A stretch of 64,000 bases of DNA from Rebecca billardiae RCC1528 (Eukaryota; Protista; Haptophyta). The notes under the pieces were generated by a model. That model was not told where the DNA came from. It saw only the letters and a list, made by a program, of their open reading frames with translations, and did no database searches. Below, one piece after another: positions 52,946-59,957 of this stretch. The stretch's first letter is position 1; the number at the start of each line of letters is the position of its first letter. The translations under genes and the position numbers were made by a program. Location: NCBI GenBank assembly GCA_965240325.2, contig OZ251231.1:1612001-1676000 (forward strand). Reading direction: 5' to 3'.

Positions 52946-53971
52946 CTACGGCTTGGGCGGGTCGCTCGCCTCGCCCGCTATCCCCCGCGCGAGTCGCGGG
53001 AATCCGACCGCCCAGTGCGACGAATAGCCGTGCACCGGGGGCCAAGCATGCAGGGTGATTGGGCACCAGCATTGGTGCAGGGATGAGTAGCATGCGAGCT
53101 CGTCGAAGATGACGATAGAGCGGCCGAGCCGCGCGACCACGGTCCAGGAGAACACCTTGTCTTCTCCCCCGTGCCAATCTGGCCACTGCACCGCCGACAG
53201 GACCGAGCGGCGGATGGCGGGCTGCCCGGTGAGCACATACGCACCCCGCGCGCCGAGCGTGCTCGCATACACGGGCATGGTCTGGAGCATCTCGGCGGGC
53301 GAGACGCCGTCCGGCTCGGCGAGGCCCGATTTGAAGCTCGCGTTGGCGTGCGCGGCGAGAAGCTCGCCCGCGCTCAGATAGCCGCCCTTGTCGAGCAGCC
53401 GCGCGGCCGACGTGTCCAGTCGGCGGAAGGTCGAAGCGTTACACGTCCACCGGTGGTGCACCATCACGAGCTCGTCTGCAGCGCGGAGCGCAAAGTGCGC
53501 GAGCAGTACGTCCAGACGTTGAGGGTGCGCCGGGTCATCCGCGTCCGCGTACACCAGAATGTCGGCCTCGGCGAGCTCGCTGGCAGCCTGCCGGTTGAAC
53601 CCCGAGGAGCGAGGGCCCTCAAACGTAATGATCACAAATCGCGCAAACAACTGTGAGTAGCGTTCGCGTAGTGATGCCAGGAGCCAAGGGTCAAGCGCTT
53701 CGGCCTCGGAGACGGAGACGATCACCTCATCGGGCCAGACCGTGCCCTCCATGTACTGAAGCAGCGACAGCTCCAGGTGGATCTCGAAGTGGGCGCGCGT
53801 GCACGGGAGAATGAGCGCGCTGCGCAAACCCGACCGATGTGGCCGCGGATTGTATCCTTGCCCGAGCCGCAGCGCTCTCAGGTGCTCGAATGGGATGCCG
53901 TGGATGGCCGTGCGCACCAGCACGAGCACAGCGCACGCGTACACGCACATCCATCCCAGGTGCATGCTCAT
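52946..53971 (-). CDS. GT-A fold (GT2-like) glycosyltransferase
   Basis: ALILPC, PDEVIVSVS, GFNRQ, ILVYADADD (DxD), HPQRL, GEDKVF; N-terminal membrane anchor. Confidence 0.78.
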   Translation of the reverse strand: MSMHLGWMCVYACAVLVLVRTAIHGIPFEHLRALRLGQGYNPRPHRSGLRSALILPCTRAHFEIHLELSLLQYMEGTVWPDEVIVSVSEAEALDPWLLASLRERYSQLFARFVIITFEGPRSSGFNRQAASELAEADILVYADADDPAHPQRLDVLLAHFALRAADELVMVHHRWTCNASTFRRLDTSAARLLDKGGYLSAGELLAAHANASFKSGLAEPDGVSPAEMLQTMPVYASTLGARGAYVLTGQPAIRRSVLSAVQWPDWHGGEDKVFSWTVVARLGRSIVIFDELACYSSLHQCWCPITLHAWPPVHGYSSHWAVGFPRLARGIAGEASDPPKP

Positions 53972-54063
53972 CACAAAGCACAGGGCGCAAACCGCGCCGC
54001 GGCGGGGGCCGCCATTGCCCGTTAGTCCAAGTTGGCGGTGCTCACGCACAGACAGCAAGGGGA

Positions 54064-55312
54064 ATGGTGGACTACAGCAAGTGGGAGGTGCTCGACGACT
54101 CCGACGAGGAGCGTGAGCGTGTCAAGGTGCGCGAGGAGAAGGAGGCCGTCCGAAGGCGCAAGGAAGCGGCCGCTCGCGTCGACCGCGATCGCGCCAGCAA
54201 GCCCAAGATCGACTGGTCCAAGATCAGCTTTGACGATCCGTCCACTTTCAAGGACATGCCTGAGGGGATGGCGCAGTACATGAAGGCCGTGTCGTGCGGT
54301 CAGTTCGGCGCGAGCAAGGACAAGGCCAAGTACAAGCTCCCTGAGACAGACGAGGAGGTGCGCACGAAGGCGAACGAGGCGAATGGCCTCAAGGAGCGCG
54401 GCAACCAGCTGGTCGAGGAGGGTGAGTACTTTGAGGCGGCCAAGCTGTACGAGCAGGCGGTGCTCAAGTTCGACTGGTACTCGGAGACGTTCGCCACCGA
54501 GCACGAGCGTGCGATCGTGCTCCCGGTGAAAGTGCCGTGCCACCTCAACCTCGCGGCCATGTCGCTCGCGCTCGGCAACTACCAGCACGCGATCACGCAC
54601 TGCACGCAGGTGCTGAGGCACGAGTCGAGCAACGCGAAGGCTCTCTTCCGCCGGGGCCAGTGCTACATGCACAGCGGCCATCTGGAGGAGGCGAAGGCCG
54701 ACTTGCTCCGCGCGCGAGAGCTGCTGCCCAACGACACCAAGCTGGCTGAGGCGATGGCCAAGCTCAAGGTGGGCGCCGCCGCGCGAGGCAGTGCCCCCCG
54801 TGCGCACGCGGATCGCCAGACAAACTGACGGGCCCCTCGCGCTCACGAGAGTGCGCCCCCTCCCCATCCGCACCGGCCCGCTCGTGCGGCAGATCAAGCT
54901 GGCAGAGTACCAGCGCCGGAGCAAAAACATGTCGAGCAAGATGCTCGAGGCGCTGCGTCCCGAGGACGCTGACGCGGCTGCGGGCGCGGAGGACGCGTGC
55001 GAGGCGCCTGGAGACGCCGAACAGGTGGCAGGCAGCGCGGGCGACTCCCCGCCAGGCGCAAGCGCGGAGCGCAACGCCACCGTCGCGAGCGACGCGGCGC
55101 CCAGCGAGGCTGAGCGCAGTGCAGCGGATGCCCCACCATGCTCCGGCGCGCCTTCCGCCGATGTAGCCCGCCTGACGGCGTGGTCCGAGGAGCCAGTCGC
55201 GGTCGGGTACGCGTGCTCAGACTGCCCGGGTGCGGGCGCCGTCCGCCATCCCGTGCTCGGGCCGATCTGCTCACGCTGCAGGCTCGTGCTCTGTGCGATC
55301 ACAGATGCGTAG
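54064..55312 (+). CDS. TPR co-chaperone (FKBP/Cyp40-type TPR) with Cdc37-like N-terminal motif; exons 54064-54768 and 54893-55312
   Basis: MVDYSKWEVLDDSDEE; LKERGN; CHLNLAA; NAKALFRRG; in-frame GT-AG intron; C-terminal CxxC..CxxC. Confidence 0.82.
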
Positions 55313-55714
55313 CAGCACAGTGTCAATATTTCCGTCATTCTGTCAAAGCGGGCTGTCCCACCTGCTGCTGCACGAGTGCAAGCTACGCTCGCACGCGGCG
55401 GCCTGGGCCCCAGATTCTGCCGCCGGCCGCGTCGCCAGGCGTGATGACGTGCGTGGCGAGCGCGCCGCGGCGGTGACGACGCCATCTGCTCGCGATAAAT
55501 CAGGTGCTGCTGATCGGCTGGGAATTTGGAAAGCGCATGGCGATTTTCGTCGCGCGGCGATTATTTCGTCGTCGCAAAAGCGCTCATCAGCAGAAAAGTG
55601 ACGACGAAAAGTCGCGCATCCACGTCTTTTGGATGGACGACCAGTGCCGCAGTGCGGCAGCAGTGACTCGATCGAGGGCCGAGTAGTCGGCTGGCGTCGG
55701 CGCGCGGGACGGGC

Positions 55715-58700
55715 ATGGCTGACGCGCTCAACGGCTTGCCGCCCGGGCTCATCCCCGCAGACTACGTGGACGTGCAGGCGCTCGGCCGCGGCAGCTTCTA
55801 CCACGCGCGCGAGGGCAAGCAGGAGCCGATCGAGTATGACGGCGCGGCCGCCGGTCTGGAGATGACCGTCGAGTACGACCTGCTGGAGCCGTACCACGTG
55901 GACGACCGCACGGGGCTGGGGCTGCGGTGCAAGCGCGACATTCAGAAGGGCGAGCGCGTCGTCGAGTTCGTCGGCGAGGTGCTCGACGACACGGAGGTCG
56001 TGCAGAAGTACGACGAGTCCATCCCGCCACGCGTCGCGTACTACCTGATGACGCTCGGCGACAACGCGTCGCTCAGCCTCAAGCTGCAGCGCGGGGACAC
56101 GAGCCTGGGCGACACGGAGATGTTCGTGGACCAGCAGCAGTGGGGCAACAAGGCGCGCTTCGCCAACGACGACGAGCACAAGCCGAACATGCAGGTGTGC
56201 TACTGGCCGGAGCCGGTGCGTGCGGAGGACGGCAGCTTGGACGAGACGCAGATGCTGCCGCGCCGCGCGTACCTGCGCGCGATCCGGCGCATCCCGGCGG
56301 GTGTCGAGCTGCGCTACTCGTACGGCGCGCACTATGACCGCTTCTGGAAGCCGAAGGACCTGCCAAAGATGGGTGAGCGCGGCGCGCGGCGCGGCGCCCC
56401 CGGCCGTGAGCGCGTGGTTTGGCTGCATGCGGCGCACGCACGCAGCCGCACTCGCCGTCGCACGCGCGCGGCTGACGCGTGCGTGCGTGCGCGCGCGCTC
56501 CTCTGCGCGCGCGCCAGCCGAGACCATCGCCAGGTCGATCATCCGGCCCGAGCGCACGCGCTCGCTCCTCGGCGCGAGTGTGCACGTCCCCGCGACCGCC
56601 GACCGGCCCGGTCGGATGACGACCGAGGCGGAAGCGGTGGAGGCCGCGCTGCTCGAGGCGCTGCCGGAGGCGCCGACGCTGCGCCCCACGGCCGAGGAGT
56701 TCGTCGACCCCGTCGCGTACATCGAGGCGCACCAGGCGCACGCGCAGCGCTTCGGCCTCTTCAAAATCGTGCCGCCGCCCGGCTGGGTGCCCGCGCGCAC
56801 GTTTCCGGAGCGGTTCCTCGCGCGCCCGCTCTACTCGCGCTCGGCGACCGCGCCACGGCGCAAGCGCGCGCGCGCGGCGGAGGGGGCGGAGGGGGCGGAG
56901 GCGGGGGCGCCGGGCTCGGCCGACGCGCCGAGCGAGCCGCACGACGGGCGGGACGCGCAGCAGCGCCAGCAGCCCGTGACCACGGCGGCGGTGGCGGCGG
57001 CGGCAGCGGCGGCGGATACAGAGGCGCTGGCCCCCACAGCGGCCGGCGGGTCCAGCGCCCCGGCCGCCGACGGCAGCGGCGGCGCCGGTCGCGATTTCTG
57101 CGCCGCGACAGCGTCGTACGCGTTCACGATGCACAACCCGGGCGGGCGCTCCTCCCGGCGCTCGTGGCGCCTCGACGAATGGCGCCGGCTGTGCTCACTG
57201 CTCGAGCAGCAGGTGGCGAGTGCGATCGCCATGTCAGGCGTGGCCGGCGCCGACCTGAGCGAAATGCCGCTGGGTGGCCTCTTCTACTCGCTGTTTGGCG
57301 CGACGGCGGGCGCGCAGGCGCTGGGCGCGCCGGAGATCTACTACGGCCCCGAGCTGCGCGGCGCGGAGGCCGCACGCGCCATCTCGCCCTGGGACCTGTC
57401 CAAGCTGCCGCGCGCCAAAGGCTCACTGCTCGGCCCTGCGACGGAGCCGGTCGCGGGCGTGACCGCTCCCGCGCTCCGCATGGGGATGCTCTTCGCCTCG
57501 CGCGGCTGGGCGGCGGAGCCGTGCAACCTGTACTCGGCGTGCGCGCTGCACAGCGGCGCGTCGGTGAGCTGGTTCGGCGTGCCCGCCGCGAGCGCCTTCG
57601 AGCTCGAGCGCGCCCTCGTCAACCACGCGTTCGATCGGACGGCGCGCGACGCGCGCCAGATTGCAGCACCGCAGCTGGTGAATGGCAGCGCGCACGTGTC
57701 GCCGATCTACCTCCGCGCGCTCGGCGTGCCGTGCTGCCGGCTGGTGCAGCGTGAGGGCGAGATAGTGGTCTCGCTGCCGTACGCGTACACCACGCACGTG
57801 TGCCGCGGCTTCTCCGTCTCCGAGTGCGTGCGCTTTGCGCTGCCGTCGTGGGCGCCGCTCGGCATGCTCGCGCTGCGGCGTATGCGCTGGCTGCGCGCGC
57901 AGACGCCGATCGCGATCGATCGGCTGATTGTCGAGGCGGTCGCTGAGAGGCTGGGCAGCTTCACGCTCGACCAGCTCCAGCCGCTGCTCCACGCCGCGCG
58001 GTACGTCGCGCTGCTCGAGCTCCGCTGGCGGCGCACGGGCGTGGCCGCGCGCGCGCACGCCCGAGACGCTCGGGCGGAGCGGCCGCAGCGCTGTGCCTAC
58101 TGCCACAGCCTGGCGAGCTGCAGCTGGCTCGAGTGCCGAGCGTGCGCGTGCGCGCCGCTCTGCCTCGCGTGTGTCGCGCGGCGCGGCGGCGCGTGCGACT
58201 GCGACACCGCGAACGCGCCGCGCGTGCTCGCCGTGCGCGTGCCCGAGGCGACACTGCGTTCGCTCGTCGAGCTGCGCTCGGCGCACGCCCTGCCGACCCG
58301 CCCGCAGCTGGCCCTGGAGATGCCGGCGGGGCAGGACCCCCTCCTGCCGGAGGCAGCGGTGCGCGCGCACGCGCGTGCGCGCGCGCAGCGGCGGACCGCC
58401 GCCACCGGATCGCGCCGCGCCGCGGGGCCGTCTCTCACAGATCGCCCGCCGCCCGCCCGCCCTCGCGAACGCGCGCGTGGGCGTGCACTCGCGCGAATCG
58501 CGTGCGCGTCCTCGGAATTATTGTTCTGATTACATCCTGCCTCTATCTGTTTCGCAGGCGCACGTGTGGCCCACGAGCCTGACTGAGCTGCGCGAGAGCG
58601 CGCTGCCGCCCACCCCCTCGCTCATTGACCAGCTGATGCGCGCCGCAGAGTCCGCCGCGGCGCTGCAGCTGCGGCTCGCGGGGACGACTGCTGTGGCGCG

Positions 58701-59022
58701 CGGCGCCGGCGCCGGCGCAGGCGCGCAGGCGGGCGTGGCGCACTGGCCGTGCGCGGACCCCGAGACGAGGGCGCAGAACGGTCGCAGCAGCGGCGCGGCT
58801 GAGCACGACGCTGCAGGTGCGGGCGTGGGGGCTGGGGCTGCAGCTGTGCCGGACGCGCAGTCACCGGTGACGCAGCCAGCACCGCCATCACACGGCGAGG
58901 ATATCGCCCTGGGCACGGGCCCCAGCCGCAACGGCCACGGGCTGGGACCTCCCACACCCGGCTCAAGCAGGCAGCTGCGCTCGCGCCCATCCTCGGTGCC
59001 GTTGGCAGCTTCCCATTCCTGA
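55715..59022 (+). CDS. SET + JmjN + JmjC (degenerate Fe site) + C5HC2 zinc finger fusion; exons 55715-56372, 56518-58358, 58558-59022
   Basis: SET: GLGLRC..EFVGEV, NKARFAND, ELRYSYG. JmjN: PTLRPTAEEFVDP..GLFKIVPP. JmjC: PWDLSKLP, GVTAP..GMLF, WFGVP, LVQREGE. Zinc finger: CAYCHSL..CRAC..CLAC..CDC. Introns splice in frame. Confidence 0.85.
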
Positions 59023-59957
59023 CTTGCTGCCCATATGTGTGCGCGGCCTCGGCTGACAGTGTGCTGCGTCGGTTCATCAGGGTCAGGGAGCGGCTGATTG
59101 CGAGTGGGCACGCCATCACGGCCATCAGAAATGCCGACGCCACGGACTTCAAATAATTGCGCTCGATATATATATATATTAATTATACGACGCTATTTTA
59201 TAACCCGGGGTGCCCGACCCGCACTGGGGCTCGGATAACGACTGATCACAGCAGCGCTGACTCGATGATTGATGACAGATGAGTGATCTATCGTGATCGT
59301 CGGCCAATTCAGTGTATTCGGCCATCGTGATGAGTCCGTGATCGTCAGGGCTGAGGCGGTCTGCCGCCCCGTGCTGACGATATATCAGAATCGTCGTCGA
59401 TATACATCATCGTCGCGTATATATCGCGATCGTCTAGCGCAGCTGCCGGCTAGTCTCAGCGCGCGCTGGCTGCTGGGTGAGTGAGTCTGGGTCTTCTGCT
59501 GTCTGCACGTGCCGCGCATTAAATTTAATCGCCGCCAATGATTGATGCGCGCACGCCATACAGCATCATAGTCATATACTCATCCGGCGCCCGGCGCTCA
59601 CAGACTACTGAGACTAGTACTGCTACTACGACTGCGGGAGCACCGCGGGCCGCCGCTGGCCACGCCACCAGTCGCAGTGCGCGCCGCCGCGGCCCGCCGC
59701 CATGTGATGATCATGTGTCTCTGACCGAGCGACGGTCCCGGTCGGCATGGCAGAGCCGCAGGCTGAGGCTCCCCCGCGCAGCCCGGACTGCGCTCCACCA
59801 ACGGCGAGCGGGGTGCATCCCCTCGCCCGCACACCGCGCGTCGCCCAAGCTGCGCGCCCGCGCAGCGTCGCACCGGCGCCCCGCCGGGCCCGCGCGCTCC
59901 CCAGCAGCAACGCCGTCGCCGCCGACCGCCGCGCGCGCGCTCGCCGGTGCCGTCCGC

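What the first reader, a model, noticed from the sequence alone, without database searches (positions are those of the whole stretch)
55715..59022. Histone 'writer' SET domain fused to a JARID2-like catalytically dead KDM5-type demethylase
Seen: an in-frame GT-AG intron (56373-56517) joins a complete SET domain to JmjN, JmjC and a C5HC2 finger. The JmjC reads WAAEP where KDM5 enzymes have WHxED, and AYTT where they have AYHxG, so both iron-binding His residues are missing. Known: JARID2 is a dead JmjN/JmjC/C5HC2 protein that recruits the SET enzyme of PRC2 as a separate polypeptide. Inference: this could be a single-chain methyltransferase that uses a dead eraser as its reader or targeting module, in a TE-rich genome. 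The SET has RFAND rather than RFxNH, so its own activity needs testing.
Basis: partly seen in the sequence, partly recalled or inferred. Interest (0 to 1): 0.8.

Follow-up and report, generated by a model that had tools for sequence, protein, structure and literature searches.

The report
SET domain fused to dead KDM5-like demethylase
One gene of this GC-rich alga joins a histone-methyltransferase-type SET domain to a KDM5-type demethylase core that has lost its iron and cofactor ligands; the fusion is real and very rare, but it is a variant of architectures already described.

Summary
Pfam finds SET in exon 1 (55715-56372) and JmjN plus JmjC in exon 2 (from 56518). A 145-nt GT-AG intron joins the two reading frames.

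The only close relative among 1.84 billion representative proteins is P0001 (E 1e-93). It carries SET, JmjN and JmjC in one uninterrupted 897-codon ORF on a genomic contig. Its matches to the two window exons abut at residues 229/230, exactly across the proposed intron.

The JmjC is dead. The first iron His, the conserved Asp, the 2-oxoglutarate Lys, Asn and Tyr, and the second His are all replaced. Asp-to-Pro and Lys-to-Val are shared with P0001, so the loss is probably old. The fold is kept: the AlphaFold model matches KDM5B and JMJ14.

SET is the best-conserved part (66%). It keeps GxG and the catalytic Tyr but has Asp for the His of the NH motif in both species, so its activity is open.

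The JARID2 link is suggestive only (support 94/97; AU p 0.23). The C5HC2 finger is seen only as a positional cysteine pattern. SET+JmjC fusions are already published for a diatom and filamentous fungi. No RNA run was listed, and the 3' end is unresolved.

Verdict: new variant of a known kind.

The parts
55715..56372 (+). Exon 1: start codon, conserved N-flank, SET domain (aa 67-204 = 55913-56326) and conserved C-flank HYDRFWKPKD (56330-56359)
   Evidence: Pfam SET 5.2e-15. It is 65-66% identical to P0001 up to the last exon residue. GC3 is 0.95.
56156..56176 (+). SET motif III variant RFANDDE (Asn kept, His replaced by Asp)
   Evidence: Aligns to RFINHS of ASH1L. RFAND is identical in P0001.
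56306..56323 (+). SET motif IV ELRYSY with the catalytic-position Tyr
   Evidence: Aligns to ELTYDY of ASH1L. Invariant between the window and P0001.
56373..56517 (+). Intron 1: 145 nt, GT-AG, phase 1
   Evidence: Splice sites. No codon periodicity, GC 0.81. The P0001 matches abut at residues 229/230 on either side of it.
56518..58358 (+). Exon 2: linker, JmjN, disordered spacer, JmjC, helical domain and Cys-rich finger. The frame stays open to the stop at 58527-58529, so the exon may end there instead.
   Evidence: Pfam. 38% identical to P0001 over 586 aligned positions. GC3 is 0.92.
56673..56774 (+). JmjN domain
   Evidence: Pfam 7.9e-11, exon-2 aa 52-85. pLDDT 93-98.
56895..57110 (+). Ala/Gly-rich disordered spacer, largely absent from P0001
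   Evidence: pLDDT below 50 over aa 126-197. Gap in the BLASTP alignment.
57474..57836 (+). JmjC domain without the iron/2-oxoglutarate site (WAAEP at 57507-57521; AYTT within 57777-57794)
   Evidence: Pfam 1.7e-15. Column statistics. The model matches KDM5B and JMJ14.
58089..58202 (+). Cys-rich module at the C5HC2 position; eight ligand positions filled, Cys at the His position
   Evidence: Alignment. The KDM5B sequence alignment runs to aa 562. pLDDT 79-95. No significant profile score.
58359..58557 (+). Putative intron 2 (199 nt). This is the only codon-aligned GT donor that reaches the frame of exon 3. Tentative.
   Evidence: Read from the sequence. The frame-2 GC3 signal fades after about 58400. 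A pyrimidine-rich tract precedes the AG at 58556-58557.
58558..59022 (+). Putative exon 3 with stop at 59020-59022. Tentative.
   Evidence: Weak match to the P0001 C-terminus (WPT.L..LR, E 0.008). GC3 is 0.81 against 0.69-0.76 in the other frames.

Best explanation
This is a single nuclear gene of two, probably three, exons. It encodes a protein of about 890-990 residues. The order is: a conserved N-flank; a minimal SET domain without AWS/pre-SET or post-SET zinc clusters; a 35-residue linker; JmjN; a disordered spacer; a KDM5-type JmjC; a helical domain; and a Cys-rich finger.

Shown: the fusion, the KDM5-type fold, and the loss of the iron and 2-oxoglutarate ligands in both known members.

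Inferred: the Jmj module cannot work as an Fe(II)/2-oxoglutarate demethylase. It is kept by selection as a non-catalytic binding or scaffold module, as in JARID2 or yeast Ecm5. SET is the only domain that could still be catalytic.

My best guess is a chromatin-bound lysine methyltransferase whose pseudo-demethylase core positions it on a histone tail or a partner. I put the anatomy at about 0.9, the dead JmjC at about 0.9, an active SET at about 0.45, and the targeting role of the dead module at about 0.3.
For: Domains.

Fusion:
- P0001 (E 1.1e-93) has SET+JmjN+JmjC. It is one stop-free 2694-nt ORF on a 12.6-kb multi-gene genomic contig.
- tblastn places P0001 residues 13-229 on window 55733-56371 and residues 230-788 on 56517-58415. 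The two matches are contiguous in the orthologue, but in the window they lie 145 nt apart and in different frames.
- The linker is 35 residues in both.
- The SET frame has no stop until 57754.
- GC dips that mark intergenic DNA occur at 55500-55650 and 59100-59550, but not between the domains.

Dead site: H is A in the window and T in P0001; E is E/C; D is P/P; N is C/Y; K is V/V; Y is R/Q; the second H is T/H. These columns are 84-97% conserved in 150 relatives.

Fold kept:
- The window keeps all seven invariant columns and 41 of 66 columns conserved at 85% or more.
- The AlphaFold model has pTM 0.76.
- Foldseek gives JMJ14 3e-29 and KDM5B target-normalised TM about 0.77.

SET constraint: 66% identity, against 44% for JmjC.
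Against: - No transcript evidence: no RNA run was listed, so splicing rests on comparative and compositional evidence.
- Only two members are known.
- No haptophyte or other transcriptome protein appeared among the relatives. Expression is therefore unproven.
- The SET His of the NH motif is Asp. By published SUV39H1 mutagenesis (own knowledge, not tested here), loss of that His abolishes activity.
- The SET structure prediction failed (pLDDT 30).
- No binding function of the dead module was tested.
Confidence: 0.55

Rival explanations
1. Doubly dead scaffold. Both the SET and the JmjC are pseudo-enzymes, and the protein acts only as a chromatin adaptor with no catalytic activity of its own.
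For: The His of the SET NH motif is Asp in both members. There are no pre- or post-SET clusters. The fungal JmjC-SET family is also suspected to have an inactive SET (PMC2474616).
Against: GxG, the Asn of motif III and the ELxYxY Tyr are intact. The whole motif-III region is identical in the two species. SET is the most conserved segment at 66%. That fits a constrained pocket, though it does not prove catalysis.
Confidence: 0.33
2. Two transcription units. A SET-only gene is followed by a Jmj gene that starts at the in-frame ATG at 56616, or an internal promoter also gives a Jmj-only isoform.
For: An in-frame ATG lies 19 codons before JmjN. No RNA data are available.
Against: The SET frame has no stop for another 1380 nt. 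Every canonical donor/acceptor pair that restores a frame gives a fusion. Coding periodicity is already present upstream of the ATG. There is no GC dip between the domains. The orthologue is one continuous ORF with the same linker length.
Confidence: 0.07
3. True orthologue or early offshoot of animal JARID2 with a SET domain added. The dead state would then be inherited from a common ancestor with JARID2 rather than lost independently.
For: JARID2 is the best solved-structure sequence hit at 2.4e-34. Window+P0001 are sister to hagfish, amphioxus and insect JARID2 at UFBoot 94 / SH-aLRT 97.
Against: Both stems are long (1.55 and about 0.6) and the amino-acid composition deviates. The AU test does not reject JARID2 grouping with other KDM5-like proteins without the window (p 0.226). 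There is no ARID. The substitutions at the ligand columns differ. The JmjC bit scores to JARID2 and plant JMJ13 are equal, 82.3 against 83.8.
Confidence: 0.2
4. Decaying or non-functional gene (pseudogene).
For: The catalytic site is lost. The family is very rare. There is no expression evidence.
Against: There are no stops or frameshifts. GC3 is 0.92-0.95. The same architecture is kept in a second species at 38-66% identity. Losses are concentrated at the active site while fold-defining residues are kept.
Confidence: 0.03

Closest known systems
KDM5/JARID1 and plant JMJ14-type demethylase core (JmjN-JmjC-helical-C5HC2)
   Same: Same domain order and fold. Foldseek gives JMJ14 3e-29 and KDM5B/C target-normalised TM 0.75-0.79. 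The sequence match to KDM5B is 4e-28 and runs through the finger.
   Different: The iron triad and the 2-oxoglutarate ligands are lost. There is no ARID, PHD or PLU-1 domain. A SET domain sits at the N-terminus.
JARID2 (Jumonji), the inactive PRC2 accessory subunit of animals
   Same: A dead JmjN/JmjC with a kept fold. It is the best sequence hit among solved structures and the tree sister at 94/97.
   Different: There is no ARID. Kinship is not significant by the AU test. In animals the SET enzyme (EZH2) is a separate chain. By published work (own knowledge), JARID2 stimulates PRC2 through its N-terminal region, not through its JmjC. The analogy therefore does not predict a reader role for the dead JmjC.
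Phaeodactylum tricornutum SET-JmjC protein (gene model bd1647)
   Same: SET lies N-terminal to JmjC on one chain. Transcripts carrying both domains were confirmed by PCR on cDNA (PMC3145265).
   Different: That SET is listed with the SMYD class, and no JmjN or dead site is reported. No such protein appeared among the 150 nearest relatives of the window's Jmj part. Its sequence was not compared here.
Filamentous-fungal JmjC-SET family
   Same: SET and JmjC on one chain (PMC2474616). The ESM Atlas cluster nearest to P0001 is an Ascomycota SET+JmjC family of 104 members.
   Different: The domain order is the opposite. There the SET, not the JmjC, is the suspected inactive partner. JmjN is not listed for that cluster.
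NSD/ASH1L/SETD2-type SET domains
   Same: These are the best SET matches among solved structures, at E 1e-8 to 1e-5 with a two-sequence profile.
   Different: The similarity is weak. There are no AWS or post-SET clusters, and NH is replaced by ND.

Membership tests
KDM5/JARID-type JmjC proteins | JmjN and JmjC domains in this order | tested here: met
   Pfam JmjN 7.9e-11 and JmjC 1.7e-15.
KDM5/JARID-type JmjC proteins | HxE...H iron-binding triad | tested here: not met
   The window reads A-x-E...T and P0001 reads T-x-C...H. H/E/H occur in 142/146/144 of 150 relatives.
KDM5/JARID-type JmjC proteins | 2-oxoglutarate-binding Lys, Asn and Tyr columns | tested here: not met
   K is V in both (K in 145/150). 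N is C in the window and Y in P0001 (N in 126/150). Y is R/Q (Y in 142/150). Assigning these columns to 2-oxoglutarate binding rests on published KDM5B structures (own knowledge).
KDM5/JARID-type JmjC proteins | KDM5-type fold of JmjN+JmjC+helical+finger | tested here: met
   Model pTM 0.76. Foldseek ranks JMJ14, KDM5B, KDM5C and KDM5A first and KDM4 lower.
KDM5/JARID-type JmjC proteins | C5HC2 zinc finger | tested here: inconclusive
   Eight ligand positions are filled, with Cys at the His position as in P0008, which Pfam accepts. pLDDT is 79-95. Pfam is blank at E 10, and a custom profile scores no better than shuffles.
JARID2 | ARID domain between JmjN and JmjC | tested here: not met
   No ARID hit at E 0.1. 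The JARID2 representatives all have it.
JARID2 | Monophyly with animal JARID2 | tested here: inconclusive
   Support is 94/97, but the AU test gives p 0.226 for an alternative and both branches are long.
JARID2 | N-terminal PRC2-interacting region | not tested
   The N-terminus here is a SET domain. No comparison with the JARID2 N-terminal region was made.
SET-domain lysine methyltransferases | SET fold with the GxG AdoMet motif and the ELxYxY catalytic Tyr | tested here: met
   Pfam SET covers the full model, positions 1-105. GLGL and ELRYSY align to ASH1L.
SET-domain lysine methyltransferases | NH(S/x)C motif III | tested here: not met
   RFANDDE against RFINHSC. Asn is kept, His is Asp and Cys is absent. 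The same holds in P0001.
SET-domain lysine methyltransferases | Methyltransferase activity | not testable with these tools
   This needs a biochemical assay. The SET model failed.
Published SET+JmjC fusions (diatom, fungal) | Sequence kinship with those families | tested here: not met
   Only P0001 among the 150 nearest Jmj relatives has a SET like exon 1. The fungal family has the opposite domain order.

The most novel reading that the evidence does not exclude
A read-write enzyme built from a writer and a pseudo-eraser. The dead KDM5-type pocket still binds methyl-lysine, the former substrate, without removing it. That would tether the fused SET domain to already marked nucleosomes, so that a mark spreads or is maintained by one polypeptide. 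If the JARID2 sisterhood is real, it would also be a single-chain counterpart of the JARID2-PRC2 partnership outside animals.
Probability: 0.15. Interest if true: 0.8.

Novelty: new variant of a known kind. Interest (0 to 1): 0.5.

Why it matters
Pseudo-demethylases such as JARID2 are important, but what their dead JmjC does is poorly understood. Here selection has kept a dead KDM5-type core for a long time, covalently tied to a SET domain. That makes the question testable in one recombinant protein: does the dead pocket bind methylated tails, and does that steer the SET?

It also adds a third, independent way of joining SET and JmjC. The diatom SET-JmjC and the fungal JmjC-SET are the other two. 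In this one the eraser half is the inactive one.

Tried and rejected
- Word-index protein searches with exon 2, whole and restricted to residues 285-585, returned nothing. Low-complexity words probably swamped them. With P0001 as query, only P0001 itself and a fish KDM4A came back.
- Two metagenome scans, one with SET patterns and one with JmjC patterns, found no relative.
- No RNA run was listed, so read laying could not be used.
- The AlphaFold model of the SET exon from a two-sequence alignment failed (pLDDT 30). It was not used for any conclusion.
- The Pfam zf-C5HC2 and KDM5_C-hel models did not hit the excised finger or helical segments even at E 10. A home-made finger profile did not beat shuffled controls.
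- tblastx and blastn of L001 against the window showed no synteny beyond the gene itself. Nucleotide similarity (71%) is confined to the SET exon and stops at 56370.
- A PRDM-like reading of the SET, prompted by the ND(D/S)E motif and an Atlas cluster with some PRDM2_PR members, got no support from solved-structure searches.
- The joined (spliced) protein was never built, searched or folded.
Full report
**What is in the sequence**

The stretch 55715-59022 lies between two GC dips that look intergenic: 55500-55650 (GC 0.55) and 59100-59550 (GC 0.49-0.59). There is no dip inside it.

Translated exon by exon, Pfam finds a full-length SET domain in 55715-56371 (5.2e-15, aa 67-204). It finds JmjN (7.9e-11) and JmjC (1.7e-15) in 56520-58526.

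The two parts are in different frames. Third-position GC is 0.95 in the frame of 55715 over exon 1. It is 0.92 in the next frame over exon 2. It is already 0.94 in the 99 nt that precede the first in-frame ATG of that frame. The 145 nt in between show no periodicity.

That interval starts with tgg|GTGAGC and ends with cgccag|CC. The SET frame itself runs on without a stop to 57754. A free-standing SET gene would therefore need a long out-of-frame tail.

**Is the fusion real?**

No RNA run was listed for this DNA, so I used comparative evidence.

An exhaustive HMMER search of 1.84 billion representative proteins with exon 2 gave one close relative, P0001 (E 1.1e-93, 897 aa). The next hit scored 7e-37.

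P0001 carries SET, JmjN and JmjC. It is encoded as a single stop-free ORF at L001:5001-7694. The contig is 12.6 kb and has other genes on both strands, so it is genomic DNA without an intron here.

tblastn of P0001 on the window gives two matches:
- residues 13-229 on 55733-56371;
- residues 230-788 on 56517-58415.

These are contiguous in the orthologue, but in the window they lie 145 nt apart and in different frames.

Exon 1 aligns at 65% identity right up to its last residue. Nucleotide similarity (71%) also stops at 56370. The SET-to-JmjN linker is 35 residues in both proteins.

Other canonical donor/acceptor pairs exist: donor 56406 and acceptor 56445. They would only lengthen the linker, and all frame-restoring pairs give a fusion.

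I put the single-gene reading at about 0.9. An additional Jmj-only isoform from the ATG at 56616 cannot be excluded.

**The Jmj module**

By sequence the best solved-structure hits are JARID2 (2.4e-34), plant JMJ13, JMJ703 and JMJ14, and KDM5B/C/A. KDM4 scores lower.

An AlphaFold model of exon 2 built on 71 sequences has pTM 0.76, and its ordered parts are above pLDDT 90. Foldseek ranks JMJ14 (3e-29) and KDM5B/C (target-normalised TM 0.75-0.79) first. The alignments are about 570-590 columns long, gaps included.

The active site is gone. The table compares the two proteins with the 150 nearest relatives.

| Column | Conserved residue (of 150) | Window | P0001 |
|---|---|---|---|
| First iron ligand | His, 142 | Ala | Thr |
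| Acidic iron ligand | Glu, 146 | Glu | Cys |
| Next residue | Asp, 143 | Pro | Pro |
| 2-oxoglutarate site | Asn, 126 | Cys | Tyr |
| 2-oxoglutarate site | Lys, 145 | Val | Val |
| Upstream residue | Tyr, 142 | Arg | Gln |
| Second iron ligand | His, 144 | Thr | His |

The link between these columns and iron or 2-oxoglutarate binding comes from published KDM5 structures (own knowledge).

The shared Pro and Val suggest that the loss predates the split of the two species. Each protein keeps a different one of the three iron ligands, which points to relaxed constraint on the metal site afterwards.

The fold-defining residues are kept. All seven invariant columns are present, and 41 of 66 columns conserved at 85% or more are retained. 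The losses cluster around the pocket.

**The finger**

The Cys-rich stretch at 58089-58202 sits where KDM5 proteins have the C5HC2 finger. All eight ligand positions are filled in both proteins. Cys stands at the His position, as in P0008, which Pfam accepts as zf-C5HC2. The region folds with pLDDT 79-95, and the KDM5B sequence alignment runs through it.

However, Pfam reports nothing even at E 10. A profile I built from 40 canonical fingers scores the window no better than shuffled Cys-rich controls. I therefore call the finger probable, not shown.

**Is it JARID2-like?**

In a careful IQ-TREE analysis (60 rows, LG+C20), the window and P0001 pair at 100/99. The pair is sister to four JARID2 representatives at UFBoot 94 / SH-aLRT 97. 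Those representatives are hagfish and amphioxus JARID2, an unnamed Cimex (bedbug) protein, and an unnamed protein from a Logan run that pairs with it. All four carry the JARID2 domain set.

Several points weaken this:
- Both stems are long and the composition of the pair deviates.
- An AU test does not reject a tree in which JARID2 groups with other ARID-containing KDM5-like proteins without the pair (p 0.226).
- There is no ARID domain.
- The JmjC bit scores to JARID2 and to plant JMJ13 are the same.

The resemblance is real at the level of 'dead KDM5-type core'. Common descent of the dead state is open; I put it at about 0.2.

**The SET domain**

SET is the best-conserved segment: 66% identity, against 59% for JmjN, 44% for JmjC and 32% for the linker. 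A 55-residue N-flank and the C-flank HYDRFWKPKD are also conserved.

Its nearest solved relatives are ASH1L, NSD and SETD2, but only weakly (1e-8 to 1e-5 with a two-sequence profile). It lacks their AWS and post-SET clusters.

GxG (GLGL), the Asn of motif III and ELRYSY with the catalytic-position Tyr are present. The His of the NH motif is Asp in both species. In SUV39H1 that His is needed for activity (published mutagenesis, own knowledge).

A conserved replacement inside a perfectly conserved motif argues for a constrained pocket rather than decay. The SET model failed (pLDDT 30). I cannot decide, and put activity at about 0.45.

**The 3' end**

Frame 2 is open to a stop at 58527-58529, but its coding signal fades after about 58400. 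The frame of 58558-59022 shows a weak match to the P0001 C-terminus (E 0.008) and a modest GC3 excess.

The only codon-aligned GT donor that reaches the pyrimidine-rich acceptor at 58557 is at 58359, giving an intron of 199 nt. That donor cuts a short Ala/Arg-rich stretch that also aligns with P0001.

The protein is therefore either 889 residues (stop at 58529) or about 987 residues (stop at 59022). Only cDNA can tell.

**What is already known**

A SET and a JmjC on one chain are not new:
- A Phaeodactylum gene model (bd1647) has SET then JmjC, and the joint transcript was confirmed by PCR on cDNA. The same paper notes the reverse order in Neurospora (PMC3145265).
- The filamentous-fungal JmjC-SET family was described in 2008. 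Its SET is suspected to be inactive (PMC2474616).
- A 2010 survey lists SET among the fusion partners of the KDM4 family but not of the Jumonji/KDM5 family (PMC2938197).
- The ESM Atlas cluster nearest to P0001 is an Ascomycota SET+JmjC family of 104 members.

What I did not find described is a SET N-terminal to a JmjN / dead KDM5-type core.

This architecture is rare. There are two members in all the searches. Only the best 150 of 2998 hits could be inspected.

**Context and limits**

Another agent's note calls this genome a haptophyte alga (s1-371916). I did not test that. An Atlas SET cluster with haptophyte members is a weak hint in the same direction.

The joined spliced protein was not assembled, searched or folded. 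P0001, a natural uninterrupted orthologue, stood in for it.

**Verdict**

This is a new variant of a known kind, of moderate interest.

Noticed in passing
window 53839-55312 (+): The upstream neighbour looks like a TPR-containing co-chaperone-type gene in two frames, probably two exons. It ends about 400 nt before the SET gene's start codon, so the region is gene-dense.
   Followed up: no
window 52946-54058 (-): A 370-aa ORF with an ADADD (DxD-like) motif reminiscent of glycosyltransferases. It overlaps the 5' end of the TPR gene on the other strand.
   Followed up: no
window 59100-59550: An AT-rich intergenic stretch (GC 0.49-0.59) with an (AT)n microsatellite near 59160-59180, just after the putative stop at 59022.
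   Followed up: no
window 56895-57110: An Ala/Gly/Arg-rich spacer of about 70 residues between JmjN and JmjC. It is predicted disordered and is largely absent from P0001. It is a lineage-specific low-complexity expansion; an unrecognised in-frame intron is less likely.
   Followed up: partly
proteins P0098, P0107, P0111 (with P0021): A separate clade of KDM5-like proteins in which the first iron His is Lys (K-E-L, K-E-K, K-E-H). It sits next to the intact P0021, so it is another, independent loss of the iron site. Their organisms were not looked up.
   Followed up: partly
L001:1-4895: The P0001 contig also carries a pseudouridine synthase, a thiamine-diphosphate enzyme and two ORFs without Pfam hits. 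None has a counterpart next to the window gene, so no synteny was seen.
   Followed up: partly
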